Shown piece by piece: positions 4,632-30,200 of a stretch of 64,000 nucleotides of DNA (positions are counted from its first letter, which is position 1; each line of letters begins with the position of its first letter). Where the stretch lies: assembly GCA_030704615.1 (NCBI GenBank), contig CM060732.1:30938001-31002000 (forward strand), in the 5' to 3' direction. This DNA is from Takakia lepidozioides. Its lineage: Eukaryota > Plantae > Bryophyta. A model generated the notes under the pieces. That model had not been told where the DNA came from, did not search any database, and was given only the letters and a program-made list of their open reading frames with translations. A program made the position numbers and the translations under genes.

Positions 4632-4940
4632 AGATTGTCAGGGCAGATGAAGAAGGCAGGGTATGTGCCTGAGACACGCTTTGTATTGCATGATGTCGGG
4701 GAGGAGCAAAAGGAATTTTCTCTTTGCCACCACAGTGAGAAGCTGGCCATTGGTTTTGGGCTGATCAGCACAGCCCCTGGGACACCTCTCCGTGTCATCA
4801 AGAATCTTCGGGTGTGTGGTGACTGCCACACCGCCACCAAGTTCATCTCAAAGATAGTCAGCCGAGCAATTGTGGTACGGGACGCAAACCGCTTTCACCA
4901 CTTTGAAGATGGGGTTTGTTCGTGTGGGGATTACTGGTGA
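4632..4940 (+). pseudogene. Otherwise intact DYW cytidine-deaminase domain, in frame with the PPR ORF but separated from it by one TGA
   Basis: [19 protein letters not shown]...[13 protein letters not shown]...[10 protein letters not shown]...[16 protein letters not shown]; the HxE, CxxC and terminal DYW motifs are all present. Confidence 0.85.
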
Positions 4941-6010
4941 AAAGATGTTCTCCCGGAAAGGTACAAGTGTCTTGCTTATGATCTGCGTAGCTGCTTTGTT
5001 CATCCACTGTTGATCATGAGAGTATTGGCTCCTTTTGATGTAAAGAGGCCCTGACTTTCAAAACTATACCCTGGAGGAGTAAGAGTACTGGGCCTAGTGC
5101 TTGCAGATTTTTAAAATGGTTCACCATTGAAATATATAATGCAGATCACAAGTAAACACGGGGAACCTCCCGAACCAGACCCTCAAAACCTGATAAACTG
5201 TTCACCTGGAAGTTGAATTTGAACTCATGCAACAGCTGGTTGGCAAAATAAGACTAGATATTACTAGATCACCTCTGTAGATAACAACTTTGTAGATTCT
5301 GCTATCTTGCAGATAACTTTAATGCGCTAAGGTCAAGTGCAGATGTAGCCCTTCAATGCACCCAAGAAACTCAATGTTGCAGAAACCAATCAGGTACATG
5401 TGGACAATATGCATGAAGGTATGACAAAGGTTTGAGCTGACTGTATGGTGTTCCTAAAGCTAAAGACTGGTGTTTCCAGCCCATGAAATCCAATCAGTTG
5501 TTTGATAGCATTGAGAGTCAACATACATCTGAGAAACAGGGATACTGACCTACAATAGATTTACACTTTCAAGGTGTTTCATGAAGAAGATTCTCAAGTG
5601 AAGCAAGTTGTATACTTGTCAATCCAGGGTCCTAGTGGTGTTTGTAGTTTTCATGATCACACTTTGTTTTCACAATAATGGGAATATATTGCTTTAGTCC
5701 AAGCATGTCACCTGTAAGTGTATTAGACATCATCCTCTCTTGTTCCATGCACTTTCTGAAATCCACAGTGTCCATACAGCTTGTGGAAAATCATTGCTAC
5801 ATGCAGCCAGGACATAATACTAGTCCCATAATGAGGTTTGAACACCTCCTTTGGACAATAGAACAAGGGATCCATTGATTCCCTCCTTTCACGACAAGTC
5901 CGTGTAAATTAATGAATCCCGATGTCTGTGTCTAGCCCAGCTTTTCTTTCCACCCTCGATTCCCCCCGAACTGCTCCCTTATATCTCACCTCAGCCACCT
6001 GCCAAGACAA

Positions 6011-9208: not shown

Positions 9209-12200
9209 CTGCATGCCAAGAACCACATCAGATTTACTTAACCTGAGTGGAAACCATTTGTTGCCTAAACTGTGACATTGCCGACTAGGTCTAACTCTTT
9301 CAAAGATACATGAGATACAAAGCTACTTCAAGCCAAAAGTGGCACTATTGACTGTATATCCATTTCTATGAAGTAGATAATTCACAGGGGAGAATGTCTA
9401 CTGGAGAGTACGAGAATGTACTCATAAGACATTGTTTGCCATAGCCTTGTGGCCATTGACCCCGCGCCCAGTTTGAGCCGAACACAAACAGACAGAAACT
9501 ACCTTTGTCAGGGGCTGACGCCGGTAGTACAAGAGAATGTCTACTGGAGAACAAGAACAAGAGATAAAGAAGGAAATTTCTGCTCAGGGATGCCCAGAGG
9601 AACCCATGGAGGGAGAAAAGAAGTTTGATATGAGCATATTCCCCTCTCCTCCCCTCCCCTCCCCTCATAGTAGGGAGGAAGAAGATGCGAAATATTTAGC
9701 AAAAACAGGGGCTGGAAGGGAATATGCCCTTACACCTAGGTACGTATGTAGTTTGCAGGGAACAGTCAACAAGATCCATGTTCCTCAAGGGAAAACTGCC
9801 CAAACCTGGTGTTACATATGGGTATAACTTACGCAGATGTTGAGGATTGCTTACATGTGGGGTGGTGAACTCGGCAATGGAGGAAGCCCTGGGTTGGCAA
9901 CAACAGGTGGTGGCAAACTTGGCAGAGGTGGAAGCCCTGGGAATGTAAAATTGGGTGGTGTAAAAGTAGGTAGTGGTGGGAGTCCTGGGATTGTAACATT
10001 GGGTGGTGTGAGACTTGGCAGGGGAGTAAGCCCTGGAAGAGTAAAATTGGATGGTGTAAAACTAGGAAGAGGGGGAACACCTGGCAAGGGAGGAAGCCCA
10101 GGGTTCGTTACAACAGGTGGGCCTGTGACAATAGATGGTGGCAAACTAGGTAAAGGTGGAAGCCCTGGGAATGTAAAATTGGGTGGTGTAAAAGTAGGTA
10201 GTGGTGGGAGCCCTGGGATTGTAACATTGGGTGGTGTGAGACTTGGCAGGGGAGTAAGCCCTGGGAGAGTAAAATTAGGTGGTGTAAAACTAGGAAGAGG
10301 GGGAACACCTGGCAAGGGAGGAAGCCCAGGGTTCGTTACAACAGGTGGGCCTGTGACAATAGATGGTGGCAAACTAGGTAAAGGTGGAAGCCCTGGGAAT
10401 GTAAAATTGGGTGGTGTAAAAGTAGGTAGTGGTGGGAGCCCTGGGATTGTAACATTGGGTGGTGTAAGACTTGGCAGGGGAGTAAGCCCTGGGAGAGTAA
10501 AATTAGGTGGTGTAAAACTAGGAAGAGGGGGAACACCTGGCAAGGGAGGAAGCCCAGGGTTTGTTACAACAGGTGGGCCTGTTACAATAGATGGTGGCAA
10601 ACTAGGCAGAGGTGGAAGCCCCGGGAATGTGAAATTTGGCGGTGCAAAACCTGACAAAGGTGGAACTCCTGGACTTGTCACATTGGGTGCTGTGGATGTT
10701 GGCAATGGAGGCAGCCCTGGAAGAGTGGAATTGGGCAAGGTACAATGCGGTAGAGGCGGAACACCTGGCAAAGGAAGAAGCCCCGGGTTTGTGACAACGG
10801 GTGGTGGAAAACTCGGTAGAGGTGGAAAGCTTGTCACAATAGGTGGTGGCAAGCCAGGCAAAGGTGGAAGTCCTGGGACTGTTAAATTAGGCAGACTAAA
10901 ACCTGGAATTCCTGGGCCTGTCACGTTGGGTGGTGTGAAGATGGGCAATGGAGGAAGGCCAGGGAGCGTGAAATTGGGTGGAGAAAAACTAGGCGGCAGG
11001 GGGGGAAGCCCTGGAAGACTGAAATTGGGTGGTGTAAAACTGGGAAGAGGTGGAACACCTGGCAGAGGAGGAAGCCCTGGGCTTTCGACAACAGGTGGTG
11101 ACAAATTTGGCAGAGGTGGAACCCCTGGGAGTGTCACATTGGGAGGTGTGAAGGTTGGCAATGGAGGAAGCCCTGGAAAGGTGAAATTGGGTGGAGTAAA
11201 ACTAGGCAGGGGAGCAAGCCCTGGAAGAGTGAAATTGGGTGGTGTAAAACTAGGAAGAGGAGGAACACCTGACAGAGGAGGAACCCCTGGGTTTATGACA
11301 ATAGGTGTGGGCAAACTCGGAAGAGGTGGAAGCCCTGGGTTCGTCACAATAGGCGGTGGCCAACTAGGCAGAGGTGGAAGCCCTGGGAGTGTCAAATTGG
11401 GTGGGGTAAAACCTGACACCGGTGGAATCCCTGGGCTTGTCACATTGGGTGGTGTGAAAGTTGGCAATGGAGGAAGCCCTGGAAGCGTGAAATTGGGTGG
11501 AGTAAAACTTGGCAGAGGTGGAAGCCCTGGGAGTGTGAAATTAGTCACGTTGGGTGGAATGAGACTTGGTAGAGGTGGAACCCCTGGGAGTGTCACATTG
11601 GGAGGTGTGAAGGTTGGCAATGGAGGAAGCCCTGGAAAGGTGAAATTGGGTGGAGTAAAACTAGGCAGGGGAGCGAGCCCTGGAAGAGTGAAATTGGGTG
11701 GTGTAAAACTAGGAAGAGGAGGAACACCTGACAGAGGAGGAACCCCTGGGTTTATGACAATAGGTGTGGGCAAACTCGGAAGAGGTGGAAGCCCTGGGCT
11801 CGTCACAATAGGCGGTGGCCAACTAGGCAGAGGTGGAAGCCCTGGGAGTGTCAAATTGGGTGGGGTAAAACCTGACAACGGTGGAATCCCTGGGCTTGTC
11901 ACATTGGGTGGTGTGAAAGTTGGCAATGGAGGAAGCCCTGGAAGCGTGAAATTGGGTGGAGTAAAACTTGGCAGAGGTGGAAGCCCTGGGAGTGTGAAAT
12001 TAGTCACATTGGGTGGAATGAGACTTGGTAGAGGGGGAAGCCCTGGTAGTGTGAAATTTGGTGGAGTAAGATTAGGCAGAGGTGGAAGCCCTGGTAGTGT
12101 GAAATTGGGTGGAGGTGGAAACCCTGGGGTTGTGACATTGGGGGGGGTGAAAACTGGTATAGGTGGAAGCCCTGGGTTTATGAGAACTGATGGTGGCAGT

Positions 12201-15200
12201 GCTGGGAGAGGAGGAAGTCCTGGGTTTGTGACAACGGGTGGTGGTAAACTTGATAGAGGAGGAACCCCTGGTATTGTGACGTTGGGAATAGTTATTGTAA
12301 GATTCCTGCAGAGACACACTCCATGTGTTAGACACATGATTATTATGCCAATCTATCTTAACTGTGCTGGCATGGACAAACATTGTCTGACAATGGAATA
12401 TGTTTGGCTTCCCCTGCAACTGGGAATCCAGTGAAAAACCTTAGGTAGGGAAAAGCAGATGGACAGACTCATAAGGAGTAACAATGCAATTGCAACTCTT
12501 TTGATGGAATTCCAGTTTAAAGCATGCATTTCGACTCAGGAGCACAGTAATTGACCACATTCTCTATGAACACTTCCTAAACACAATTCAGAATAAAATT
12601 CCTGCATTCAAGTGCCTTTTAGATCATTTGAAAGACATGCTATTCATCCTCATAGACCTTACCTTGCAACGGTTAGCGCATGTGGTTGCAAAATCACTAC
12701 TTTCGATTCAGTCAGTCACACTTTCTGAGGCACAGAAATAGAGGAAATTGCAGGTGACTTACAATGGTGGCAGAGGCGGGAACATCCACGAGGGAATGGT
12801 AGGCGTTAAATTCCTGCATACATTACATAAAAATGGCATTAATCTAAAACATGTAGAAGAGAAGTGTAATCTTATTAGTATACAGTGGGGAGTGAAATTG
12901 GAAACCTATATAGAAAATGACAAAAAGAGATGGAATACAGTGGCAGTTGAAGTACTCCATGACATTAGTTACCATGGTTCTCTTTAGTCTATAGTTTGTG
13001 TAGAATAGAGAAACACTAGGGAGTCAGCAGCATATAGAGAACCTATTATACTGGTGGTAGGGAGAGGAAAGTGAGCATGCAATGGTAAGTGTTATGGTAC
13101 GCAGCGATAGGTCAGGGGTTTTGCTTACAAAGGTGGCAGAGGTGGAAAAGTCCAGTTTGTAGGGATGGGTGTGATATTCCTGGAGTAACCATAGACAAGC
13201 ATATGTAAGTTTCAAAAAGTTCCCACCCTGCAGGAGAGACACAAACATATAAACCAAAAACCGGGAGACACTGTATTCTTTTGTTTTGTGGTGAAGTAAA
13301 AATAAGATGATGATTCGCTATTGTTTGAGGGATGTTTTCTTTAGACTTGACTTGTCAAAGAGGTGTCGCCTGTAGACCCCGGCTTTGCTTTGTTTGGAGA
13401 AATGAAATGAAATGAAATGGTACTTCATAACATCAGCGGAAAGCTAGAAAGAAAGAGAGTCAAGGGGGCAGGGTGACCAGAGGTGAGTAAAACTGGGCCA
13501 TCATTCAGGAAAGATTAATAGTATTCTCATAGTGGAGATAGATACCATGAAGCTTATGAGACAAAACCACATAACAAACAAAGAAAACAGTAGACCAGGC
13601 CTAAACCCTTGCACAGACTGGAGTGAAGGTAAGATGTCAAGCTTTGTCTGAAATTTTAAACCCTCGAGCAGTAGTGGTTTTTTTTCGCTGTGGTTTTGTT
13701 TTCTCTCTCATGTTGTGAATTCCATTTTGTCCCATAAGCTCTTTGAGCTTTCCGCGGACGTTATATAGTACCATTTCATTTCATTTCTGAACAAAGTGGA
13801 GGTGGAAAAGTTGGAAGTGTGATAGGTGGTAGTGGGGTTATTTTCCTGTGTGCAGGCAAATTGACCAATGTCATGGACTGCCATATGAAGATTAAGGAAA
13901 TCTTTGGGAGGAAAGGGCTTATGATATTGAGCGGTAAAGCACAAGAAATGAAATGAAATGGCGCTTTATAACGTCCGCGGAAAGCTCATAGAGCTTATGG
14001 GACAAAATGGAAGAAAACATGAGAGAGGAAACAAAACCAGAGCCAAGAATAAAAACTATTGCTCGAGTGATTGTCCTAGGGTGAAGGCCTTGTGCAGGTA
14101 AGCTGCCAAGCATTTCTGATCCTCGTAGAAATGATACTTTCTCCCGCAGAAACCTCAAAGAGCTTGTGGGACAAGAGAAAGCATGAAACAAGAAAGAGAG
14201 GAGAGTGGGGCCCTCAACAAGCAGCCAAAAACAACCATGGATCCAAGGAAGGGTTGTCTAAGAGTAAACGCCTCGTGTAGGTATGCTGCCAAGAATTCTG
14301 ATCCTAGTAATGTAAGACATCTGTGACAGATTGGATATCTGGGAATAGACACTAGTATCTGCCCCCGACCCTGGACTGAAAGAAAGAAGAACAAAAGAAA
14401 CCTCTCAACATCCTGGGGGCAGCCAAGGGCAAAGAATGAAAGGACTTCAGAGCAAAGATACGGAGAGAGTGCACCTGCAAGCCAGCTGGAAGGGTGGCTT
14501 ACACTAGTGGTACAGGTGGCAATGTCCAGTTTGTAGTAATGGGTGTTAAATTCCTGAGAATATGAGAATGCAGCTAATTATCTCAAGTGTTGGTTCTATC
14601 AAGTATTGTGATAGCCCCTGAGATCCTAATTTTTGCAAATGACCCAATGAGAAATACTTATGCAACTGACATGGAGTTGCACATAACAAGTGGAGATATT
14701 GCAACGGAGAGAGAACAGAAAGTGAAGAGGAGGAGAACCAGGAAGACTGATGGGTGGCAGGGGTGTTATGTTCCTGTGGAAAATGTATCGTGGCCCTAGG
14801 AGTAAACTTAATGTCGCTGCGATAGAAGTAGATTTAGTAATGTGAAAAATGATATGAAGGAACTTGAGACAAAGAAATGAAATGACATGAAATGGCACTT
14901 TATAACGTCCGTGGAAAGTTCAAAGAGCTTATAGGACAAAATGGGAAAAACAAGAGAGACGAAACAAAACCAGAGCCAAAAAACAACTACTGCTCAAGGG
15001 ATTGTCTAAGGTCAAGGCCTCGTGCACCCACGGATCTCATAATATAGAGGGCAATAAAAGAAGAAGTTGTTCTTCAGTTTCAATTTCCCGGTTGCGCCCT
15101 GTCCAAGCTGGACACAGGCGGTCCTCCCGTTGCAGGTTTTCCCATCTGCCAGTCTCTATCCATAGGTTGTGGGAGCCCACCCTGAGCCGCCCCAATGCCC

Positions 15201-18200
15201 TCAGGAGGGAAGGAGATAAAGATGCCGAAAGGTATTGGGCCTCAAGATTCTATCATCTCGGAGAACCAAGAATGTCTCTCGATAGAAATGGAGCATTGTC
15301 GTGAGATTGGGTAGCTTCCAAGTTCTCCTGACGTGTAGTTCCATAAGCTCCCTTCTAATGAGTCTGTTGCGATCCTATTTGGATGTGATGTCTATCCCTT
15401 CTGGATTCACTGGTAATAGTGAAGCAATAGAGAGTCCATTGCGCTAAAAAAAACTGTCCAGTCGAGCATACCAGGAGTGCTTGAAACCTGCAGTTTTGAG
15501 CCTAATAGATGTTGCGAGGGCTCTTGCCACGAGCCCCTTGGGTGGAAGGGCTTGTAACCTATGAAAGAAAAATTGTAAGCCGGAAGAGGGCCCGGTTTGC
15601 AGTGGCACGGATGCGAACTCTGCACCTAGGATGTGAGATGGAGTTGTGCCACTGGCGCCAAGCATTGTTTGGAGAAAAGACGACTGCAATGGTTCCAGAT
15701 TCTTTTCCCACCAGGAAGTGGGACACCAGGTGCCCAGAATTCACAACCATAAGTGGCAGCCGGGGTGACAACGCTGTCAAATAGCCACTTTTTGGTTGGG
15801 GGTGGGCGCAGATGTATCTGTTTGCATTTGGCCTGAAGGCGAAGCCAGTGTCATAGTGGCACAAGATATGAAAGTGGCCAGCTGTGATTGTCATGTTTGG
15901 CATGACGCCTAAGTGCCATATGGAATTAGTCCAAGGTAGATTATATCATTACAACTGGGTACAAGGATGAGTCAGTAAGAGAATGTACTCTTAAGACATT
16001 GTTTACGCTGTAGCCTAATTGGTGAGTAAGAGAGAACTGCAAGCAAATTAAACAAGGAAGAGGCAGCTTACAATGATGGTAGAGGTGAAAATGCCAGTTT
16101 GTAGGTATTGGGATTAGATTCCTGACAATGTCAGAAACGAAGACAATCATCTCACAAGTTGATATTTCCAGTCCTGCGAAAAGATAAGAATGTACTCATA
16201 AGACGTTGTTTGCCATAGCCTTGTGGCCATAGACCCCATGCCCAGTTGGTGCGGAACAAGAGGGAACAAACTACCTTTGTGAGGGACTCACTCCAGTAGT
16301 GGGACTTACCTCGGTATAAACAATTCGATCGGGCTTTCTAGATAGCCCTTAGCACAAGCATCAATCTGCTGTGTGAGCTGCCCAGCAATTAGACCCCAAC
16401 AAGGCCAGGAGTTTAGGCTTAGCCTCAAGCTTTTGAAAGTTGGTGAACAGAGGTGCAGGGTGTTCTTGATGGGAGGGTCGCTCTCTGATTAAAATAACCC
16501 AGTATCAGAAAATGGATATAGTCTTCAGGGCATCCATTCCTCTCTGCACCTGCTCCTGTTCAAAGGAAGACTCCCTGCTCAGTCTAGTGCCAAGGGTAGG
16601 TAGGCCCTTCAGATCATCCTTAAGGTCTTCACCAATAACACAAACTGGAAACAAGTTCAGGGAAGTTTTATGCCTAACTTTGTTGTGTTAAGACATTCTT
16701 CATGCGTCTGACATGGCTTAGACACTAGAGCCCTCACTGTGCTGTGAAGTACCCATGCACTCCATGGTTGTTTTTCTCTCACTGTGATAGGGCGTCAGCT
16801 TCATCTAGCAGGGTCATTTCTAATTGCTTAATATCCAGGTACTTGATAATCTCCTCTATCCTTCTCTGCCTGAACTCTCTCGACGTGATGAGTTCAAGGT
16901 CAGATGGCGGGGTCAGTTGAATTGGCTCTATCAAGACCGTCCTCTGAAACAGTACAGGTGGTGCGCCAATGCCACGTTAGCTGTTCTAGCGAGAACAATA
17001 GAACTTATAAGTCCACAAGGGGCCCATGCAGGACAAGTACAGGTACAAACCACTCCAGAAAACATCGAATGACGCCCGAAGCCCGAAGTGTCTTATGCAG
17101 GTAGGCTGTCAGACGCACTTCGGGTTCTCAAAGCTGAAACTTCTGCCAGAGAGTGGGTTTCCTTGAAGAGACAGTAGGATTGTCTTTCTTACAGGAGAAG
17201 CTTCTGCCAGGAAAAAGGAAAGAGGAGAGGAGAACAGAGCAGAAGAAATGAAATGAAATGAAATGAAATGGTGCTTTATAACGTCCACGGAAAGCTCATA
17301 GAGCTTATGGGACAAAATGGAAGAAAACATGAGAGAGGAACAAATCCAGAAACCAAGAATAACAATTAATGTTCTAGCGATTGTCTAAGGGTGAAGGCAT
17401 CATGCAGGTAGGCTGCCAAGCATTTAGTGTGCAGGAAGCCCAAAAGGTGCAAGGAATAACTAGTAGATCAATTCAGAACCACAGACAAATGAAGGATAGA
17501 AAATAGGACAAGAATAGAATAGAAATGTACGAAGTCAATGAGAAGCACCAAGGGATTTAGAAAGGGGGAGGTGGCTTACAACGGTGGATGTCCAGTTTGT
17601 AGTTATAGGTGTCAAGGCCATAGCCCTTGCACGACACTCTGAGAACAGAACGGGACGGGTAGCTGAGTGGTAGAGCACCCCACCGGAATGGGGGAGGTCC
17701 TAGGTTCAATCCCTAGCCCGACCACATGCCAGTGGTTTTCCAACATGGTATCAGAGCCAAGGTTGGGGCGGTGGTCAGAATGGGTGGGCATTAGCATAAG
17801 GGCTATGCCTTGAGGGGGAGTGTTGGAGGTGTCAAGGCTATAGCCCTTGCTCGACACTCTGAGAACAGAACGGGACGGGTAGCTGAGGGGTAGAGCACCC
17901 CACCGGAATGGGGGAGGTCCTAGGTTCAATCCCTAGCCCGACCACATGCCAGTGGTTTTCCAACAGTGTCAAGTTCCTGAGAATATCACAACCAAGTACA
18001 ATTATCTCAGAGAGACTGAAGTACATCCTGGTGTAGCAATGACCTGAAGAAAAAAACTTTATGAAGTCCATAAGTGTGGGAGGCCAGAGGTTTAGAAAGG
18101 GGCGGTTGCTTACAACGGTGGTAAACGTGGGAATGTCCAGTTCGTAGTGATGGGTGTCAAGTTCCTGGGAACATCACAATCAAGCAGAATTGTCTGAGAG

Positions 18201-21200
18201 AAACTTTTAAGCAATATCAGTCGATCCTAGTGTTGCAAAATGACCTGAGGAGAAAAGCTTTATAAAGTCCGGCAGGGGGAGGCTCCAGAAATTTAGAGAG
18301 GGGGAAGTTGCTCACAACAGTGGTATAGGTGGGAGGGTCCAGTTCGTAGTGATGGGTGTCAAGTTCCTGAGAACATCACAGTCAAGCAGAATTATCTCAG
18401 AGAAATGAAATGGTACTTATAACATCCGCGGAAAGCTCATAGAGCTTATGGGACAAAATGGAAGAAAACATGAGAGAGGAAACAAAACCAGAGCCAAAAA
18501 TAAAACTATTGCGCGAGTGATTGTCTAAGGGTGAAGGCCTCGTGCAGGTAAGCTGCCAAGCATTTCTGATCCTCATAGTGGAAGACTTCAGTGACAGATT
18601 GGGTGAGAGATTGAGAGATTGAGAAATGAAATGAAATGAAATGGTGCTTTATAACGTCCGCGGAAAGCTCATAGAGCTTATGGGACAAAATTGAGAGAAA
18701 GTCAATCGATATCCTTAGATCTTTGCGTTGCAAATGACCGGAGGAGAAAAGATTTCTAAAGTCCTGCAGGGTAGGGTGGTGGACAGAGATTTAGAAAGGA
18801 GGAGGTTTCTTACAATGGTGGTAGAGGTGGGAATGTCCAGTTCATAGTGATGGGTGTCAAGTTCCTGAGAACATCACAGTCAGGCAAGATTATGTCAGAG
18901 AGAGTTTCCAGCGTTATCAATAGATCCTTGTGTTGCAAATGACCTGAGGAAAAAGCTTTCTAAAGTCCTCCAGAGATTTAGAAAGGAGGAGGTTGCTTAC
19001 AACGGTGGTATAGGTGGGAATGTCCAGTTCGTAGTGATGGGTGTCAAGTTCCTGACAACATCACAGTCAAGCAGAATTATGTCAGAGAGACTGTCAAGCG
19101 ATATCAGTAGATCCCTGTGTTGCAATTGCCTGAAGAGAAAAGCTTTAGTGAGTCTGCTGGGGGTGGAAAGAGTGGGGCAAGGGATTTAGAAAGGGGGATG
19201 TTCATTAAGTCCATGGGAAAGTGGGGTGGGGAAGCAAGGGTTTTAGAAAGGGGGAGGTTTCTTACAATGGTGGTAGAGGTGGGAATGTCCAGTTCGTAGT
19301 GATGGGTGTCAAGTTCCTGACAACATCACAGACAAGCACAATCATGTCAGAGAGACTGTTAAGCGATATCAGTAGATCCCTGTGTTGCAATTGCCTGAGA
19401 GAAAAGCTTTAGTGAGTCTGCCGGGGGTGGAAAGAGTGGGGCAAGGGATTTAGAAAGGGGGACGTTCATTGAGTCCATGGGAAAGTGGGATGGGGAAGTA
19501 AGGGTTTTAGAAAGGGGGAGGTTTCTTACAATGGTGGTAGAGGTGGGAATGTCCAGTTCGTAGTGATGGGTGTCAAGTTCCTGACAACATCACAGTCAGG
19601 AAATATATGTCAGAGAGAGTTTCCAGCGTTATCAATAGATCCTCGTGTTGCAGATGACTGGGGAAAAAGCTTTCTAAAGTCCTGTTGGGGTGGGGGGCAT
19701 GCAGAGATTTAGAAAGGGGACAATGGTGGTCTATAAAGCTTCCACGGGGAGGCGCACCAGAGATTTAGAAAGGAGGAGGTTGCTTACAACAGTGGTATAG
19801 GTGGGAATGTCCAGTTCGTAGTGATAGGTGTCAAGTTCCTGACAACATCACAGTCAAGCACAATTATGTCACAGAGACTGTCAAAGGGATATCAGAGATC
19901 CCCGTGTTGCAATTGCCTGAAGAGAAAAGCTTTAGTGAGTCTGCCGGGCGGGAAAGTGTGGGGCAAGGGATTTAGAAAGGGGGATGTTGCTTATAATGGG
20001 GATATAGGTGGGAATGCCCAGTTGGTAGTTATGGGTGTCAAGTCCCTGACAACATCACAGTCAAGCACAATCATCTCAGACACATGTGAAGCGGTATCAG
20101 TAGATTCGTGGTGTTGCAAATGAAATGAAGTCCATGGGAAAGTGCGGTGGGGAAACAAGGGTTTTAGAAAGGGGGAGGTTTCTTACAATGTTGGTAGAGG
20201 TGGGAATGTCCAGTTGGTAGTGATGGGAGTCAAGTTCCTGAGAACATCACAGTCAGGCAAGATTATGTCAGAGAGAGTTTCCAGCATCATCAATAGATCC
20301 TTGTGTTGCAGATGTCCTGAGGAAAAAGCTTTCTAAAGTCCCTGGGGGGTGACGGCTCGCATAGATTTAGAAAGGGGACAATGGTGGTCTATAAAGCTTC
20401 ACGGGAAGGCGCCCCAGAGATTTAGAAAGGAGGAGGTTGCTTACAACGGTGGTATAGGTGGGAATGTCCAGTTCGTAGTGATGGGTGTCAAGTTCCTGAC
20501 AACATCACAGTCAAGCACAGTTATGTCAGAGAGACTGTCAAGCGATATCAGAGATCCCCGTGTTGCAATTGCCTGAAGAGAAAAGCATTAGTGAGTCTGC
20601 AGGGGGGGAAAGAGTGGGGTAAGGGATTGAGAAAGGGGGAGGCTGCTTATAATGGGGATATAGGTGGGAATGTCCAGTTGGTAGTTATGGGTGTCAAGTT
20701 CCTGACAACATCACAGTGAAGCACAATCATCTCAGACACATGTGAAGCAGTATCAGTAGATCCCTGGTGTTGAAAATGACCTGAGAGAAACGCTTTATTA
20801 ACATGGGAAGGTGGGGTGGGGAAGCAAGGGTTTTGAAAGGGGGAGGTTTCTTACAATGGTGGTAGAGGTGGGAATGTCCAGTTGGTAGCTACGGGCGTTA
20901 AGTTCCTGAGAACATAAAGAAGAGAGAAGACTTATACTGAAAGAACGTCCATGGGAGGTCCCAAGGGCCCATGGGACACAAAAAGAGAAAGAAAAGAGAG
21001 AGGACCCCAGGACCCAGGAAACTACGGCACCAGGTGCCCAGAATCACAGCCACAAGTGGCGGCAGGGGCGACGACCTAGTTAAAGAGCCACTTTTGGTCG
21101 GGGGATGGAGCTGGTGTATCTCTCTCTAAGTTTGAGAGCCTCATGCAGATACGCCACCAGGCGTCTCTGGATGAAATGAAATGACACTCTAAAAATGTCT

Positions 21201-24200
21201 GCAGGAGGCCCAAAGAGTTTATGGGACAAAAGAAACGAAATTAAATGGCTTACCGTCTCGCTATTTTCAAAGCAGGCCAATGAGAGAAGGGGAAGACAAG
21301 GTAAGTAACTTAGAATGGTGAGAAACATAGGTGGAACATTAGGACTTCTACAATGGGTGATAAGGCTGCTATGTTTGTACATGTAGGCATGCATGGTTTC
21401 TTGAGCCAAGGTCATCATGGGAATTCCAACATACAAAACTGCCCAGCCATATTTAAGTAACCATCAAACATATGCATACTAAGAGTACTATGCACAAAGA
21501 AAGTGCGGAAAGAATGAGCCAGCAAGAAAGCTTACAATGGTGGTAGAGGTGGGAACGTCCAGTTTGTTGCTACAGGTGTTAAATTCCTGGGAACATCAAG
21601 AATGATAGAAGCTTGAGCCAATGTCATCGTAGACAATCAGCATATAAAATGCCTAGCCATACTGATGTAGAACGTCAAAGCAGATGTGTATGAAGAGAAT
21701 AGGATAGAACAAAAAGTGAGAGACAGAATGAACCGCAAGAAAGCTTTAAAGAATGGTAGAGGTGGGAATGTCCAGTTTGTTGCTATAGGGGTTATATTCC
21801 TGGGAAGATGGACCATGAACAACACTATCTCAGGATCTCTTGACCCAGTGTCATGTTGGAAACACAAAATTGGCTAGCTATAGAACATCAAAGCACAACT
21901 GGGTGCAACAAAAGTGAGAAGGACAACAAATAACCTGCAAGAATGCTTACAATGGTGGTAGAGGTGGAAATGTCCAGTTTGTTGCAACAGGTGTCCTGGG
22001 AACATCAATAAGGAACAAAATTATATCAGAAAGCTAGAGGAACTCTTGTGGTGAAATGGCAAAAGACTTTAGACAACAGGTACAGACACAGAGAAGGTAC
22101 TTTTAAGAACAAGAAAATGTTTGTTAAGTCCCAGAGAGAAAAAGAGAAAGAATCGTCATAACAGCTGTAAGAGGCTTGAAGAAAAAAACGTTAAAAAGGG
22201 AAAAAAGAAACCACAACCAGACCACAATGACTATGAAATGGAACTTTATAATGTCCGCAGAAAGCTCAAAGAGATTATGGTACAAAGGGGAAGCAAGAAA
22301 CAAGAATAATAGACAGAGAGAAGCCAGAAGCAGCCCAAAAGTAACTACTGCTCAAGGGATTGTCTAAGGGTCAAAGCTTCATGCAGAAAAGCTGCCAAGC
22401 ATTTCTGATCCTCATAATGGAAAACTTCAGTGAGAGATTGGGTGTCACGGAACAGACAGTGGAAAAACTGCCACGGGTCTCATAGTAAAGTGGACAGCAA
22501 AAGAAGAAGTGCTCTTCAGTTTCGATGCAAGTTCTTCAAAGTGAGGGTAGGGAAAGATATGAAAAGCAACCACGGTGGTGGGTGGAAAGAAGGAAGCGGG
22601 AGGGGCCATAGGGGTTACACAGATCTAGGTTTTATAGAGCCCACAGGAAGATCAATGAGTTTATTGGAAAAAAGAAAGCAGGATATAAGAAAGAAAATGG
22701 GGCCCTCAACAAGCAGTCAAAAGATCACTATTCATTAAAGATTCTCTAAGATGGAGGGCCTCATGCAGATTGCTGCCAAATTCTGATCCTCATCATGGAC
22801 AACCCCAGCAAAGGATTGACTGCCCAGGAGTAGGCAATACTACCAACCCCGGATCTCATAGTGGAGAGAGCATTGAAAGAAGAAATGTTCTTCAGTCTGA
22901 ATCTCCCCTGTCATCTCGAGGCACCAGCGGCCAGCACACTCCAGGTTGTCCCATCTATCAATCTCTATCAGTGGAAGAAATGAAATGACACTTAATAACA
23001 TTAAAGAGCTTACGGGACAGAAATGTAATGAAATGAAATGGTACTTTGTAACGTCCACGGAAAGCTCAAATAGCTTATGGGACAAAAGGGAGAAACCAGA
23101 AAGAAGAGATGAAACCACAGCCAAAAGCAGCCAGAAGCAACTACTGCTGAAGAGTTTGTCTAAGGGCCAAGGCCTCATGCAGATAAGCTGCCAAACATTT
23201 CTGATCCTCATAATGGAAGACCTCAGTGAGAGATGGGGTTCCTCGGAATAGACAGTTGAATGTCCCACGGATCTCATAGTATAGAGGGCAATAAAAGAAG
23301 AGGTGTTCTTCAGTTTCAATTTCCTGGTTGCGCAACAAACAAGAAAGAGAAGTGACATGAAATGAAATGGTACTTTATAAGTCCGCGGAAAGCTCAAAGA
23401 GCTTATGGGACAAAATAAGAGAAAACATGAGAGGAAACAAAATCGGAGCCAAAAATAAACTTATTGATCACGGGATTGTCTAAGGGTGAAGGCCTCATGC
23501 AGGCTGCCAAGCATTTCTGATCCTCATAGTGGAAGACTTCAGTGAAAGATTGAGTTCCGTGGAATAGACAGTGGAATCTCCCACGGATCTCGTAATATAG
23601 AGGGCAATAAAAGAAGAAGTGTTCTTCAGTTTCAATTTCCCAGTTGCGCCCAGTGCAAGAGCCTCTCCCCCGGATCGCACAGTAGAGAGGAATGTGAAAG
23701 AAGAAATGTTCTTCCTTGTTTCCAGGTCTGCCTAACATGGAGTTCCATCTCCTGACTGACGAGCCTGTTGCGGTCGTGTTTGGTAGAAATTCCCAACACT
23801 CGATATTTTGTGGTAGTAGGGAAGCAACGGACAGACTGTGTTCAAAGAAGCTGGAGACCCAAGCATACGAAGAGGTCTTGCGACCGTTTTGAGTCTCACA
23901 ACTGTTACGAGGGCCTGGACTGGCCGCTATTTGGGTGGTAGAGCTCACAACCTTGTCAGAAGATAGTAAAACAGAACATGGCCTCAATCTCAAGAGGTAC
24001 ACAAGCAAATTTACTGTGATGATGTTGTACCTCTAGCCAAGCAATCCATGGAGGAAAGATGATTGCAGGGGTTCCAGATTATTCTCCCACCAGTAAACCG
24101 GAACCCAGGGGCCCAAAACTGGCAGCCATAAGTGGCAGCACGGTGACAGCTGAGTCCAAGAGCCAAGAGCTATAAGAGCTGGAAATTGGGGGTTGGATTA

Positions 24201-27200
24201 CAATGGTGGTAGAGGTGGGAATGCCCAATTTGTACCTATAACTGCCAGGTTGCTGGTACTATGGCAAACAAGCACAAATCAACTCACAGACTTCATTATA
24301 TACTCACTAAAAACTGGTATGAGAGAAGGGGAAAGTGGCACAGGCATGAAGTAGGCCAGGGAGGGTTCAGGGATTCAGAAGGTCGGCATTGTACTTGTAG
24401 AGGTGAGGAGTGTTAGTTAACTGAGAAAGTTAAGTGAACCAGAGGTTCAATTGACCAATGGGTGTCGCATCTCTGAAAGCATCACACACTGTATTCCATT
24501 GACAAAACTGCAAAATGTTGAAACCAATATGGGATGAGTATAGAGGCAAACTGTGAAATACATTTTCGGAGATGTGCTCACAAACCCGCAGAAATTCTCG
24601 GAAAGACCCCAAAACCAAAGTATCAAAAGGGAAACACAGGTTGCTTATGATGGTGGGATTGTCCAATTGAATGGAGAGTTGGGTGTGAAGTTCCTGAATA
24701 CATCACACCCAAAGCATTATCTTAATCTAAGTTGTACTAAGACTAAAAGGGGTGGAGAGACCTAATAACGGGAGTTTGTCACTCGAAAGTGAAGGAAGGG
24801 AGTATAACGTACAATGGCGGGAGAGGTGGAAACGTCCATATCAGAGGAGTGGGTGTCAGATTCCTGCCAAACCTCCCTCAAACATTAAAAAGAGAACTAT
24901 GGGGAGAGAATCATTTAAGAAGAAGACTCAAACTCTTTCATTACAGAGAGGACCATGGAGACATCGATTTCGTATGACACAAAGGAATCCAACATCAAGA
25001 AGCCTACCGGAGATTTTCAACTCAGATATGCTGCCAAGCAGTTCTGACCCTCATAGAGGAACACCTCTGCATGGGATTGGGTATCTCAGAGTAATAATAT
25101 CCCCCCCGGATCTTACAGTAGAGAGGACAATGAAAGAAGGAACGATCTTCAGTTTCAATTTCCCTCCTGTCATTTCAAGTGCAAGCGGGGCACAAGAGTC
25201 AGCACGATGCAGGTTGTCCTACCTACCAATCTATATCTGCAGACCGCGGGAGCCCACCCTAAGCCTTCCCAATGCCCTTAGAAGAGAGGGAGACATAGTT
25301 GCAGATGAGTATTTGGGCTGATGAGCGCAGAGAACCAAGATTGTCTCCCCATAGAACTGCAGCTTTGCTGTAAGATTGACTGGTTTCCAGATCCGCCTAA
25401 CATGAAGTTCCAATAGCTCCCGCCCGATGAGTCTGTTTCAGTCGTACTCGGACGATATTTCCAAGCCCTCCGTACTTTGTGGCAGTACCAGACTTTCTGT
25501 GTCGTTCAAAGAAGTTCCAGGTGCTCAAAGAGCTTATGGGACAAAAGATGCAGGATGCAAGAAAGAATGAAATGAAATGAAATGAAATGGTGCTTTATAA
25601 CGTCCGCGGAAAGCTCATAGAGCTTATGGGACAAAATGGAAGATAACATGAGAGAAGATGAAAGAAACTTTACAAATCCAAGGGGGCCCAAGGAGACATA
25701 TAGGAAGACATACATTCAACCAAAAACTTTCAAAAACAACTTACAGTGGCGGTAGAGTGGGGAATTTTGGTAGTGTGATATTTGGTAAAACAGGTGGTAA
25801 TGGTGTCGTGTACCTGAGTGCAGCCATCAATGGAATTGTTAGCAACCTGCTAGAGTATTCACACATTACATCTTGAATAGCAAGTTCTAAAAGCGACGAA
25901 GCACTGGACGGAGAAAGACATGGGAAAAGAGGAGAGGAAAAATAAACAAAGCACAGAAAGGGAGGAAAGGACTTGTGAAAAACAACTTACGGTGGTGGTA
26001 AATGGGATACGCTGGGTGTTGTAGTGTTTGGTAAAACCAGTGGTAAGGTTATATTCCTGATACCATCATGAACGGAGATGTTAGCCAATCTTATCCAGTA
26101 CGATATGAGAGGGTCAGAGATGACATCTTGCTTAGTGACCACAAAATGATTAAAGTACCAGAACATAGGGTATGAACAGATGCAACCTGAGAAAGAGAAA
26201 TGTGTCTATGAGAGCTTCTGGAACAAACAAACAAAGAAACCACTAATAAGACAGTGGAAGAAATGGAGGTTTTTTGAAAGAGAAAGATTGTACTCATAAG
26301 ACGTTGTTTGCCGTAGCCTTGTGGCCATTGACCCCGCGCCCAGTTTGAGCGGGAACAAAAGGGACAGAACCTACCTCTGTCAGGGGCTGACGTTGGTAGT
26401 AAGACTTACCTCCATATAAAGAATTAATCCGGGTTTTCCAGATATCCTCTAGAAATCCCTTCACACAAGCATCAATCTGCTGTGTGTGATTTGCCCAAAA
26501 ACTAGGCCTCAGGAGGGCCTGGGCTTTTGGCTCAGCCTCGAGACTTTCAAAGTTGGTAAACAGGGGTACAGGCACAATTCCCTTAATAGATTTGAAGAGA
26601 GCGTCTCTTTGGTGAGAGAACCCCGGACAGTGTATCAGAAAATGAATACTGTCTTCAGATTGCCCACACAACGGGCAATTTCACTCTCCCTTTCCTCTCT
26701 GCTTCTGTTTGCTGTTCAAAGGTAGGCTTCCTGCCCAGAGTTTAAATTTCAGTCTAGTGCCGAGAGTGGGTAGACCCTTGAGGTCATCCAAGATGTCCTC
26801 CCCCATGTCACAGACTGGAAACAAGTTCAGGGAAGTTTTCTGCCTAACTTCATTTTCATCAGACAATCTCATGGCAACAGACATGGCTGAGGACACTACA
26901 GACTCTAAGTCAGATTTATCCAGCAGGGTCAAGACTTGCGGATCCAGGTCCAGGTCCTTGAGGATCTCTTCTACTCTCTTCTGCCAGGACTTAGCCTGTT
27001 TGACAGGGCAGTCCTGTTTCCAAGATATAGAGTCGATTAATTTAGGATATCTGGTGTTGGGCATATGTTGCAGCTGACCCCACCATCTGATCTTGAATTC
27101 ATCTCGTCGGGAGCTTAAGGACGGAATGCCAAACTCACCCCGAACAGCCACATTGGCTGTTTTGGAGCATGCTGACATACACTCCTTAAGCACCCCCAGA

Positions 27201-30200
27201 AATGAAGTCGAAAGAGCAGTGGACTCTTGGGAGAGTTTCGTTTCCTCCGTGGCTGACAAGATCATTGGGAGGAAACTAATTGTCTGCGGTAGAGCAGTTA
27301 ATTGGTGGACTAATGAGATTAAACTCAAGATAGCTGAGAGACGAGCCCTCTATAAAGAGTGCTGCAATTTGGAAACCAACAGAGAATTGTGGGCGAGGTA
27401 CTACCAGCTCCGTAAAGATATCAATCAGCTTGTTAGGTCTCAGAAGAAATTATACTGGGACAAGTTATACAGTGAAATAAACTCAAACCACCATGGTGGT
27501 AATGACAAGAAATTCTGGTTGGCCCTTCAACGTTTGTACAAACCGAAAAACGGTCAGCAAGTACAAGCGCTGAAGACTACTAAAGGTGCAGTGGTGACTT
27601 CATCGGTTGACATTGTCAAAACCTTTGAAACTCACTACAGTATCCTTGGCAGAACTTCTAGGTCTAACAGCGAGGGGCATTAACAGAGCGTGACTGAAGT
27701 TCTTGGAGCGATTGGACAAAATGAGGGAGAGCCTCTTGCAAGGCCTGGACGTACTCAGCCTTGACCTCCTCATTGTGGAATTTTTCTATGCGCCACTTCC
27801 GAATCGAACGTTTCACAGATCTCTTGGTGGTGGGAAAACACCTTTTGATCTCAGTCCAAACCAGGAAGTGGTCAGAGGTACCAATATCAGTTCTGTCGAT
27901 CAACACATTGGCACACTGGGGGAACAAAATTTTGTCCATTATGATATAGTCCACAATGGAACGTTCCCCAGTTTGGGGTTTCTAACGAGTCCACTGCACT
28001 TGGTCACCTCTTGTCCTGTTATTCAAGGTCAAAAGCTGAAGCTCTTCTAGACAGTTAATTAACCGTCTGCCATTAGAATTCAGTTCATCCTCACCAAAAG
28101 GTCCAATGATATCGTCCTGATGGATCCCTTTGCCCACCCGGGCATTGAAGTCCCCCAATAGTACCACCTGACCTTTGGCAAGGAACGAAGCACAGTCCAG
28201 CTTTACATCTTCGAAGGCCTTGTCTGCATCAGCACTAAGGGTCCCCTCTGTGGGCATGTAAACACAACCAACAAAGAGGTCCTTTGTACTCATGCCGCCC
28301 TTCAAATTCAGTTTTAGCCAGATACTATGCTCGTACCTCAAACCCTTGTTGATAATTTCACAATTGAAAGAGAAAGAAAGAAATTAGGAGATGGAGAGAG
28401 GGATGGAGGCCAGAGGAGCTTATGGAACCCAATAGACAACTAAAGAAAGCCAGTGTACGGAAAAACCCAACCCTCGCTGGGGAACAAACAGAAAGAAAGA
28501 AGGAAACTATGTCCTTGGGGGAAAGGAATGGAAAAAAAACAAACCAAAACAAAAAACGTTTTAATAGCTGCACAGTTCTAGGGGACAAAATAGATTAAGG
28601 AAAATCCACATCAAAGTACTCCAAATTTTACAGTTGCTCCTGTCCTCCCCAGAAAAGAATGTACTCATGCTGTTCCCTGCAAACGTTGTCTTTGTCTAGA
28701 AAACAGAAAGGGCCTTTGGAAAAAGGGCTGGCTTACAACTGTGGCATAGGTGAGAACAGCCATGCTGGATTACTAGCAGTTATATTCCTGAAAGAATCAA
28801 ACACAAAAAGCCTTCATTGTAAAGACTTGATTGTATCCAGAAACTTAGCATAGTGAGAGTGTTACACACCCCGAAACATAAACTAGATTGTTAGTAACAG
28901 ATATTGATCAGAAACCTGACAGCATTTGCTCCAAAGACTACTGACTGCATTAGATCAGAAGATAGAGGCTTTCATGATTTCCCAGCTGGATAAATCATGG
29001 ATGAAGCAAAACACCTCCTAGTTTTGACATGAGAGCAGTGCTTAACCTAAAGTGTCTTCAGATATCCTAGAGTTCATCAAGATTGAGGATTACAAGCTCA
29101 GAGTCAACTCAAGATGTGTTGAGCTGCGGACCATTTCTTCTTGGCCTTACTTGTAACCTCCACATTACGAGCTATCCAAACTCCGCTAGAAGGTGTGTTT
29201 AAATTCCTACTCCTCACAACTTGGAGATGGAGAAAGATCCTTCCAAGAAAGATTTTCAAAATCCAAACCCAGAAAAACTACAGATTTGACAAATTTGGTA
29301 AGAAAACAATTTACAACATCTGTGGGCCAAGAGAGTGAGAAATGAAATGAACTTTATAATGTCCACAGAAAGCTCAAAGAGCTTATGGGACAAAAGGAAA
29401 CAAAAACAAGAAAGAGAAGAAAAGACAGAGAATGAGCCCAAAAGCAACTACTGTGCGAGAGAGAGAAACATATAGACATTCTTGCAAGGGAGCAAACTTA
29501 CTGGAGTACAGGAGCTAACGGGCATCCTGGAAGAAGTCCTGTCAGATTGTTCCCTGCCAAAATTCTGCACATAACATTTGCAGTCGTTAGAGGGCCAAGA
29601 AGACACAGGTGCGCTGATATGAGGGATAAAGGACAAAATGAAGGATGTCCATTGAAGAAAGGAGAAACGGGCATTTGTTCGCTGGATTGCAGAACTCTTC
29701 TAGAAGAGAATACAACAGTGTCAGCCAACAGACACCCAAACTGGACTTCACATTGCATTTTTATCCAGCAAGGTTCTAAAAACTTTTCTAAAGAGAAGAA
29801 AACCCTGGCCTTCGAGCAAAGCAAACTAGACAATCATCCGGAAGATATCTGATATGCATATGAGCTGTTTTCTTTTTTCTGCAGATTGCCCAAAAAAGCT
29901 GTTGCTACCAGCTACTGTCTAGCCAAGCTCAAGATGTCCCTATGCCCCTGCCTCTTCCAGTGCTGGCATCTTCTGGGATCCATCAACCCCTGTCCTGATG
30001 TATTGAGGGTTTTTCAAGGATATTTGGGGGACAATTCAAGCTTTCATGATGCCACCATGGACTTCTTTGACCTTCTCCAGGGCTGCCAGGCTGGCACACC
30101 CATGCTGAGCATATCCGGACATCATGGCATTCCATGAGACTACATTTCATTCAGCTAATTGCCAACCCTTGGATTGCATCCCTCATGCCCCTGTTGTTTT

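What the first reader, a model, noticed from the sequence alone, without database searches (positions are those of the whole stretch)
12763..28787. Hidden array of ~27 duplicated symmetric microexons building a tunable Pro-rich glycostalk in an LRR protein
Seen: what looks like a dispersed repeat (cttacaatggtggtagaggtgggaatgtccagttcgtagtgatgggtgtcaagttcctg) is, on the minus strand, cag|G AAC TTG ACA CCC ATC ACT ACG AAC TGG ACA TTC CCA CCT CTA CCA CCA TT|gtaag. This is a 51-nt exon with both splice sites, encoding NLTPITTNWTFPPLPP(L). Twenty copies are intact. All are 3n in length (45/51/66/69), phase 2-2 and stop-free, and in the older copies similarity drops sharply outside the splice sites. 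They sit exactly between phase-compatible LRR exons and the large Pro-rich exon, and the ORF track misses them. Inference: any subset can be skipped in frame, so alternative splicing could vary stalk length by up to ~350 aa and change sequon number, as in schistosome micro-exon genes or Dscam-style cassettes. I know of no such plant LRR gene.
Basis: partly seen in the sequence, partly recalled or inferred. Interest (0 to 1): 0.93.

Follow-up and report, generated by a model that had tools for sequence, protein, structure and literature searches.

The report
Duplicated microexon array in LRR gene
A secreted plant protein with two leucine-rich-repeat ends builds part of its long, sugar-coated, proline-rich middle from about twenty tandemly duplicated 51-base exons; the exons are real, and a moss shares the design, but splicing that tunes the length is not shown.

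Summary
On the minus strand, 12754-28799, there are about 27 copies of a unit with a small exon of about 51 nt. Twenty copies keep AG/GT splice sites, a 3n length (51, 45, 66 or 69 nt), phase 2-2 and an open frame. Seven are broken or doubtful.

They lie between the last N-terminal LRR exon (29564-29502) and a 2451-nt Pro-rich exon full of N-glycosylation sites (12305-9855). That exon splices on to a second LRR block.

Evidence that they are exons:
- In old copies, similarity is confined to the exon and its splice signals.
- pN/pS is 0.34-0.49, and third codon positions vary most.
- An RNA-like contig fits big exon + microexon 12763 + microexon 13129.
- Contigs of two runs hold 51-nt units head to tail.
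- A Physcomitrium patens gene (XP_024377705.1) has the same architecture. Four of its LRR exons have identical lengths, and it has nine 27-60-nt phase-2 microexons in the same place.

The design is therefore ancestral and already annotated, though uncharacterised. This species expanded it by tandem duplication.

The tunable-splicing idea is untested here. The only hint is a moss isoform that skips exactly one microexon.

The scan also noted a similar 19-microexon LRR gene on another piece of this genome (s1-472832, unchecked).

The parts
32419..32524 (-). Exon 1: start codon and signal peptide, phase-1 donor
   Evidence: Open frame with a hydrophobic leader and a G|gtaact donor. Same intron phase as P. 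patens exon 1.
31998..32133 (-). Exon 2: LRRNT_2 cap
   Evidence: Pfam PF08263, E 5.8e-8. 50% identical to P0003 residues 32-75. Splice sites.
31307..31343 (-). Exon 3: 37-nt LRR piece
   Evidence: Same length as P. patens exon 3, with cag| and |gtgagt.
30773..30879 (-). Exon 4: 107-nt LRR exon
   Evidence: 56% identical to P0003 residues 90-123. Same length as the moss exon.
30392..30466 (-). Exon 5: 75-nt LRR exon
   Evidence: Same length and phase as the moss exon.
29502..29564 (-). Exon 6: 63-nt LRR exon, the last before the array, phase 2-2
   Evidence: Same length as P. patens exon 6.
24202..28787 (-). Old, divergent microexons: 28787-28737 (51 nt), 26056-25991 (66), 25813-25745 (69), 24863-24813 (51), 24252-24202 (51, both sequons lost); plus a broken copy near 24705-24652 (donor AT)
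   Evidence: LINE fragments lie in the intron 26294-28341.
21536..21995 (-). Microexons 21995-21951 (45 nt) and 21586-21536 (51 nt); copy 21799-21749 has lost its donor
18114..20905 (-). Young tandem core. Ten intact 51-nt microexons start at 20855, 20445, 20187, 19788, 19530, 19266, 19001, 18814, 18316 and 18114. Two dead copies (20644, 19986) have an AT donor.
   Evidence: A 657-bp block is duplicated at 90% identity. A 51-nt head-to-tail joint is seen in the X1 and X2 contigs at 18113-18163.
16065..17988 (-). Decayed copies: 17988-17966 and 17615-17571 are halves of one unit split by tRNA-like SINEs; 16132-16065 is 50 nt (frameshift)
12763..14553 (-). Old microexons 14553-14503, 13179-13129 and 12813-12763 (51 nt each); a doubtful 57-nt candidate at 14773-14717
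   Evidence: By the depth arithmetic, 12763 and 13129 lie in the X1 contig that is joined to the big exon. Nothing was laid on 14503.
9855..12305 (-). Big stalk exon: 2451 nt, phase 2-2, 36% Pro, 39 N-x-S/T sequons with a 16-aa period, internal 48/228/459-nt tandem repeats
   Evidence: An X1 contig ends exactly at its acceptor.
6880..9208 (-). C-terminal exons: 9208-9119 (PGTPPCD hinge), 7694-7623, 7217-7149 and 6942-6880 (second LRR block); further exons not mapped
   Evidence: tblastn with P0003. Phase-2 splice sites.

Best explanation
This is one gene of about 26 kb on the minus strand, from about 32524 to below 6880. It encodes a secreted protein with these parts in order:
- a signal peptide;
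- an LRRNT cap plus about four LRRs;
- a Pro-rich, densely N-glycosylatable stalk of about 1,170 aa;
- a Cys hinge;
- a second LRR block.

The first roughly 350 aa of the stalk come from about 20 functional microexons. Each is a phase 2-2, 3n cassette that encodes one 15-23-aa unit, typically N-L-T-P-I-T-T-N-W-T-F-P-P-L-P-P-L. That unit carries two sequons and a PPLPP motif.

The array grew by unequal-crossover-type tandem duplication of exon-plus-short-intron units of 190-265 bp, and of higher-order blocks. Because the exons are symmetric, every gain or loss keeps the reading frame. Stalk length and sequon number can therefore change freely over evolutionary time.

Copies that lose a splice site simply drop out as silent intron sequence. 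The design (LRR exons, then phase-2 microexons, then a big Pro-rich exon, then a C-terminal LRR block) is inherited and is shared with a moss gene.

Shown: the structure, the selection on the exons, the splicing of some exons, and the conservation. Inferred: secretion, glycosylation, the spacer role, and that most intact copies are included constitutively.
For: - Copies, splice sites, 3n lengths and open frames.
- Exon versus intron similarity in old copies: 0.69 versus 0.57-0.58, with a random baseline of 0.52. Ungapped intron identity falls to about 0.27 within 10-20 nt of the splice sites. In young copies it is 0.92 versus 0.75-0.78.
- pN/pS is 0.49 in old copies and 0.34 in young ones. Third codon positions are the most variable, and N1, W9 and P15 are invariant.
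- RNA-like contigs: X1 record 1 is 415 nt with 0 mismatches. It ends at the big-exon acceptor with 88 letters left over. The depth bins equal exactly 51 nt at 12762-12812 plus 37 nt at 13128-13164, at that contig's depth of 17.8.
- A joint that 'goes back 51' at 18163>18113 is present in both X1 and X2. The shortest genomic spacing between units found here is about 187 nt.
- Introns have no depth except over TE-like segments.
- Moss homologue P0003: same domain order and LRR exon lengths of 37/107/75/63 nt identical to this gene. It has nine microexons of 27-60 nt, all 3n, cag|..|gt and phase 2-2, just before a 1329-nt Pro-rich exon.
- Block duplication of 657 bp at 90% identity, carrying a dead copy along with it.
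Against: - RNA support is direct for only two old microexons and for unspecified near-identical young ones.
- Nothing was laid on exon 14503 (depth 0), and the 24-29 kb copies were not examined.
- The kind of runs X1 and X2 is a guess by the tool. I infer RNA from the coverage pattern.
- The 51-nt back-joint could come from a paralogue with similar microexons. Note s1-472832 reports one.
- The placement of contig record 1 on the microexons is my arithmetic from depth bins. It is not a listed joint.
- No protein, glycosylation or localisation data exist.
Confidence: 0.85

Rival explanations
1. One reading: the array is a regulated cassette system. Cells include different subsets of the microexons and so set stalk length and sequon number by tissue or condition, like titin PEVK or the schistosome micro-exon genes.
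For: Every intact copy is 3n and phase 2-2, so any subset keeps the frame. The P. patens UniProt isoform P0006 lacks exactly the 54-nt microexon encoding residues 343-360. Nothing was laid on exon 14503, while its neighbours 13129 and 12763 are covered.
Against: No isoform data exist for this species. Contigs cannot show skipping, and a hole in them proves nothing. The four RefSeq moss isoforms X1-X4 differ only at the C-terminus, not in the microexons. The depth of the collapsed 51-nt-unit contig is 118.6, against 17.8 for the unique contig. That fits several copies per transcript, which looks like mostly constitutive inclusion. This is a weak argument.
Confidence: 0.2
2. Only the few old, divergent microexons are used. 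The young core at 18-21 kb is a recently amplified intronic satellite of pseudo-exons that the spliceosome ignores.
For: Dead copies were co-amplified with live ones, so amplification itself needs no selection. Direct contig placement exists only for 12763 and 13129.
Against: Young copies keep perfect cag|..|gtaag sites. Their exon identity is 0.92 against 0.75-0.78 for the flanks, and pN/pS is 0.34. The head-to-tail 51-nt joint was laid on the young copy 18114 at 90% likeness or more, with about 6.7 times the depth of the unique contig.
Confidence: 0.12
3. The repeat is a non-coding dispersed or tandem repeat or a TE fragment. The splice-like ends and the open frame are chance.
For: It is embedded in TE-rich introns with LINE and SINE pieces.
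Against: All copies are on one strand inside one gene. The codon-position pattern, the 3n-only indels, the conserved splice sites, the RNA contigs and the homologous moss exon structure all argue against it.
Confidence: 0.02

Closest known systems
Physcomitrium patens XP_024377705.1-XP_024377708.1 / UniProt A0A7I4E1Y8 (auto-named 'leucine-rich repeat extensin-like protein 5', uncharacterised)
   Same: It has the same domain order: signal peptide, LRRNT, about 4 LRRs, a sequon-rich Pro-rich stalk, a PGTPPCD hinge and a C-terminal LRR block. Its LRR exon lengths are identical (37, 107, 75, 63 nt). It has phase-2 symmetric 3n microexons just before one big Pro-rich exon, separated by short introns of 103-264 nt.
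   Different: The moss has nine mutually divergent microexons of 27-60 nt and a stalk of about 650 aa. This gene has about 20 live and about 7 dead copies, mostly a uniform 51-nt unit, with a young tandem core and a stalk of about 1,170 aa. Sequence identity is only 39% in the stalk and 50-77% in the LRR exons.
LRX (leucine-rich repeat extensins) of angiosperms
   Same: Both are secreted chimeras of an N-terminal LRR domain and a Pro-rich, glycosylated wall-type domain. NCBI's automatic name for the moss homologue points to this family.
   Different: This gene has no Ser-Pro3-5 motif and no Tyr in 816 aa, so it lacks the extensin signature defined in PMC4769139. Its sugars would be N-linked (N-x-S/T) rather than Hyp-arabinosides. 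A second LRR block follows the stalk. The stalk is split into microexons.
Titin PEVK region (vertebrates)
   Same: Both have a Pro-rich, disordered spacer built from many small duplicated exons that keep the frame. The exons evolve by tandem duplication (PMC6469411). Exon skipping sets the spacer length (PMC3575840).
   Different: Titin is an animal intracellular spring and is unrelated in sequence. Regulated skipping is proven there and not here.
Schistosome micro-exon genes (MEGs)
   Same: Both are secreted proteins encoded largely by symmetric 3n microexons (10.1101/2023.06.21.545858).
   Different: In MEGs nearly the whole coding sequence is microexons of 3-81 bp with long introns, and the variation is thought to be antigenic. 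Here the microexons form one module of a large multidomain gene. They are tandem duplicates of one unit with short introns.

Membership tests
Moss/lycophyte-type LRR - glyco-Pro stalk - LRR gene (P. patens XP_024377705.1 family) | Signal peptide + LRRNT_2 + short N-terminal LRR block | tested here: met
   Pfam LRRNT_2, E 5.8e-8. tblastn gives 50-77% identity to P0003 exons.
Moss/lycophyte-type LRR - glyco-Pro stalk - LRR gene (P. patens XP_024377705.1 family) | Same intron positions and phases, and same exon lengths, in the LRR head | tested here: met
   Exons of 37, 107, 75 and 63 nt in both species.
Moss/lycophyte-type LRR - glyco-Pro stalk - LRR gene (P. patens XP_024377705.1 family) | Run of 3n phase 2-2 microexons followed by one large Pro/N-x-T exon | tested here: met
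Moss/lycophyte-type LRR - glyco-Pro stalk - LRR gene (P. patens XP_024377705.1 family) | PGTPPCD hinge and C-terminal LRR block | tested here: met
   7/7 identity at the hinge. C-terminal LRR exons are 54-68% identical.
LRX (LRR-extensin) | Extensin domain with repeated Ser-Pro3-5 | tested here: not met
   0 SPPP in the 816-aa big exon and 0 in the moss stalk. Definition from PMC4769139.
LRX (LRR-extensin) | Tyr cross-linking motifs (Y-x-Y) | tested here: not met
   0 Tyr in the big exon.
LRX (LRR-extensin) | Pro-rich domain is the C-terminal end of the protein | tested here: not met
   A hinge and a second LRR block follow the stalk.
Regulated cassette arrays (titin PEVK / MEG type) | Many symmetric 3n exons encoding repeat units | tested here: met
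Regulated cassette arrays (titin PEVK / MEG type) | Several isoforms differing in which cassettes are included | tested here: inconclusive
   Only contigs were available. One moss isoform skips one microexon.
Dscam-type mutually exclusive exon clusters | Exactly one exon of a cluster per mRNA, with docking/selector RNA pairing | tested here: not met
   The contigs hold two or more units joined head to tail, and 12763 joined to 13129. Selector elements were not searched for.

The most novel reading that the evidence does not exclude
The array is a true length-and-glycan rheostat. The plant regulates which of about 20 interchangeable microexons enter the mRNA, by tissue, stage or stress. This sets the distance between the two LRR heads and the N-glycan load of an apoplastic protein. 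It would be a plant counterpart of titin PEVK splicing. The array's copy number may also be polymorphic among individuals.
Probability: 0.2. Interest if true: 0.8.

Novelty: new variant of a known kind. Interest (0 to 1): 0.55.

Why it matters
- It documents an uncharacterised, apparently ancient family of secreted land-plant proteins, shared by a moss and a probable lycophyte. Two LRR modules are held apart by a very long, N-glycosylated, Pro-rich stalk.
- It shows a clean plant example of a protein spacer that grows by tandem duplication of symmetric microexons.
- Such genes are easily mis-annotated. ORF and gene finders miss 51-nt exons, and PMC8831610 reports that plant microexons are widely misannotated. 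Family members are therefore probably hidden in other non-seed plant genomes.
- If inclusion is regulated, this would be a rare plant case of splicing-tuned protein length.

Tried and rejected
- Full-length P0003 against 1.84 billion representatives, and the word-indexed search with P0003. Both were swamped by generic LRR proteins, so no further family members could be recognised and the family's distribution stays unknown.
- ESM Atlas with the moss stalk: no usable feature hit, and only meaningless structural rows with TM below 0.3. The Atlas model has a mean pLDDT of 0.39, which fits a disordered stalk.
- Pfam on the big exon: no family.
- The look-up of encoding contigs with isoform X2 failed. 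Isoform X1 worked.
- Only two runs of the species were offered, both kept as contigs. Starts, strand, expression level and isoform ratios could therefore not be read.
- A first fuzzy-regex scan timed out and was replaced by blastn and nhmmer.
- I first gave copy 24198 wrong exon bounds, which put a false stop in frame. This was corrected to 24202-24252.
- Rejected: that the + strand ORF 9837-12434 (865 aa, Gly-rich) is a gene. It is the antisense reading of the Pro-rich exon.
- Rejected: LRX membership, because there is no SPPP and no Tyr.
Searches used single exons by reference or the stored moss protein.
Full report
**Observation**

- blastn with one unit finds 26 copies.
- An nhmmer profile of the intact exons finds 24 significant and about 4 weak copies. 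All are on the minus strand between 12754 and 28799, and there are none elsewhere in the 64 kb apart from weak echoes inside the big Pro-rich exon.
- Tandem Repeats Finder sees the young core (18784-20915) as arrays with periods of 187-264 bp.

**Intact and broken copies**

I read every copy with its flanks. In that phase one base completes a codon and two bases start the next, so the exons are phase 2-2.

- Seventeen intact copies are 51 nt. The other three are 45, 66 and 69 nt.
- Seven copies are dead or doubtful:
  - Three have the donor GT changed to AT (24652, 20644, 19986).
  - One lost its donor through a deletion (21749).
  - One is 50 nt and would shift the frame (16065).
  - One is split by two tRNA-like SINE heads (17966/17571).
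  - One has only a weak donor (14717).
- The intact set sums to 1047 nt, which is 349 aa with 33 sequons.

**Are they exons?**

Four independent lines say yes.

1. Exon versus intron similarity.
   - In the seven oldest 51-nt copies, exon identity is 0.69.
   - The 60-nt intron flanks are 0.57-0.58 identical, close to the 0.52 of random 60-mers.
   - Without gaps, intron identity drops to about 0.27 within 10-20 nt of each splice site.
   - Even in the young copies the exons (0.92) are better kept than the flanks (0.75-0.78).
2. Coding constraint.
   - Third codon positions vary most. The minor-base fractions are 0.20, 0.13 and 0.30 by codon position, and the peak sits at the same bases when the exon is read in the other two frames.
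   - Pooled pN/pS is 0.49 in old copies and 0.34 in young ones.
   - N1, W9 and P15 are invariant.
   - All length changes among spliceable copies are multiples of three.
3. RNA. Only two runs of the species were offered, both as assembled contigs of unknown kind. They leave the introns empty except over TE-like stretches, so they behave as RNA.
   - X1 contig 1 (415 nt, depth 17.8, no mismatch) lies on 12200-12304. It stops exactly at the big-exon acceptor with 88 letters still to place.
   - The depth bins of 12600-12999 and 13000-13199 equal 51 nt (12762-12812) and 37 nt (13128-13164) at depth 17.8. These sum to exactly 88.
   - The contig is therefore big exon + microexon 12763 + part of microexon 13129.
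   - This placement is my arithmetic, not a listed joint. The tool showed only the best 15 of 59 joints.
   - Both runs hold a joint that 'goes back 51' at 18163>18113. This means 51-nt units directly head to tail, whereas the closest unit spacing found in the genome is about 187 nt.
   - Nothing was laid on exon 14503, which proves nothing either way.
4. Homology.
   - The big exon finds one real relative, Physcomitrium patens XP_024377706.1. Its cluster holds four RefSeq isoforms and one UniProt isoform.
   - I fetched its locus and mapped the protein exactly.
   - The moss exon order is: signal peptide exon, LRRNT exon, LRR exons of 37, 107, 75 and 63 nt, one 180-nt exon, nine microexons, a 1329-nt Pro-rich sequon-rich exon, a hinge (PGTPPCD) and C-terminal LRR exons.
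   - The nine moss microexons are 33, 45, 48, 36, 45, 27, 45, 60 and 54 nt. All are cag|..|gt, 3n and phase 2-2.

**The gene in the window**

Guided by the moss protein, exon by exon, the gene reads as follows:

| Exon | Coordinates | Note |
|---|---|---|
| E1 | 32524-32419 | start codon, signal peptide |
| E2 | 32133-31998 | LRRNT_2, Pfam E 5.8e-8 |
| E3 | 31343-31307 | 37 nt |
| E4 | 30879-30773 | 107 nt |
| E5 | 30466-30392 | 75 nt |
| E6 | 29564-29502 | 63 nt |
| Microexon array | 28787-12763 | about 20 live copies |
| Big exon | 12305-9855 | 2451 nt |
| C-terminal exons | 9208-9119, 7694-7623, 7217-7149, 6942-6880 | hinge and second LRR block |

- Four LRR exon lengths are identical to those of the moss, so the intron positions are inherited.
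- The big exon is 36% Pro. It has 39 sequons at a 16-aa period, no SPPP, no Tyr and no Lys.
- The big exon is itself a nest of 48/228/459-nt tandem repeats.
- The stalk thus evolves in two ways: by repeats inside one exon, and by duplication of whole exons.
Frame continuity was checked junction by junction.

**How the array grew**

- The core at 18-21 kb consists of exon-plus-intron units of 190-265 bp.
- A 657-bp block of three to four units (19472-20247 versus 20129-20915) is duplicated at 90% identity. It carried a dead AT-donor copy along with it.
- Duplication is therefore mechanical, of the unequal-exchange type. Selection then keeps the spliceable copies clean, and dead copies persist harmlessly as intron.
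- Older copies at both ends of the array are separated by introns swollen with LINE and SINE pieces.

**Organism**

It is not named. A neighbouring PPR ORF (2199-4631) is most similar by identity (54-58%) to proteins of the lycophyte Diphasiastrum complanatum, and less similar to those of gymnosperms, mosses and ferns. The genome is probably a lycophyte's. If so, the family predates the split of mosses and vascular plants.

**What it most likely does (inferred)**

- It is probably an apoplastic or wall protein, because no transmembrane segment appears in the moss homologue.
- Its two LRR heads are held apart by an extended, heavily N-glycosylated, Pro-rich spacer.
- The Atlas model of the moss protein is of low confidence (pLDDT 0.39), as expected for such a stalk.

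**Comparison with known systems**

- It is not an LRX in the strict sense (PMC4769139). It has no Ser-Pro3-5 and no Tyr, and a second LRR block follows the stalk.
- It works like other exon-built spacers. In titin PEVK, small duplicated exons are skipped to set spring length (PMC6469411, PMC3575840). Schistosome micro-exon genes are another parallel (10.1101/2023.06.21.545858).
- Exon-phase symmetry in disordered regions is a known route to modular growth (PMC3632108).
- Plant microexons are known to be widely missed by annotation (PMC8831610).

**Alternative splicing**

- This is not shown.
- For it: the exons are fully symmetric, and one moss isoform (UniProt A0A7I4E1F9, P0006) lacks exactly the 54-nt microexon encoding residues 343-360.
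- Against it: the four RefSeq moss isoforms do not differ in the microexons. The collapsed 51-nt-unit contig is about 6.7 times deeper than the unique contig, which fits several copies per transcript. This is weak evidence.
- I put regulated cassette choice at about 0.2.

**Verdict**

The exon reading is well supported. The architecture is conserved and already annotated in a moss, but it is uncharacterised and undescribed in the papers I could search. The expansion to about 20 live copies is lineage-specific, and the tunable-splicing idea is open.

Earlier notes of this scan describe the same gene (s1-470442) and a second gene with 19 microexons elsewhere in this genome (s1-472832, not checked).

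Noticed in passing
window 831-4940 (ORF 2199-4631, + strand): A PPR protein ORF of 810 aa. Its nearest named relatives by identity (54-58%) are from the lycophyte Diphasiastrum complanatum, and no 100% match is in the protein collection. A first-reader note (s1-470123) calls it a PLS-PPR-DYW factor with OSB-type motifs, which I did not check.
   Followed up: partly
window 17653-17725 and 17873-17945 (+ strand): Two tRNA-like elements with an undetermined anticodon (ARAGORN). They are probably heads of a tRNA-derived SINE, inserted twice about 220 bp apart inside a destroyed microexon unit. Both runs have RNA-like contigs over 17690-17828.
   Followed up: partly
window 26294-28341 (- strand) and 22840-24008: Non-LTR retrotransposon fragments lie inside introns of the array. 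There is an endonuclease/RT hit (PF14529, E 5e-4), and 'HFFFxCPLY' motifs of the kind I recall from the C-terminal part of non-LTR reverse-transcriptase ORFs (not tested).
   Followed up: partly
window 13600-14200, 15000-15800, 16000-17400: Intron stretches with very high summed contig depth in both runs (up to 27,782 at 16200-16399), at 90-95% likeness and with many rearranged joints. These look like expressed, high-copy repeats of the genome rather than this locus.
   Followed up: no
window 9837-12434 (+ strand): An 865-aa Gly-rich ORF with GGSPG-type repeats. It is simply the antisense reading of the Pro-rich exon and is not a gene.
   Followed up: yes
window 37235-38674 (+), 40360-41784 (-), 45793-46824 (+): Other long ORFs in the window: a second PPR protein, a family-29 (sialyltransferase-like) glycosyltransferase (PF00777, E 9e-28), and a class-V aminotransferase fragment.
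   Followed up: no
L001 (P. patens CM009321.2:18821578-18832846), exon 5223-5276: UniProt isoform A0A7I4E1F9 (800 aa) skips exactly this 54-nt microexon and also ends early with a different C-terminus. The RefSeq isoforms X1-X4 differ only by a few residues near the C-terminus.
   Followed up: partly
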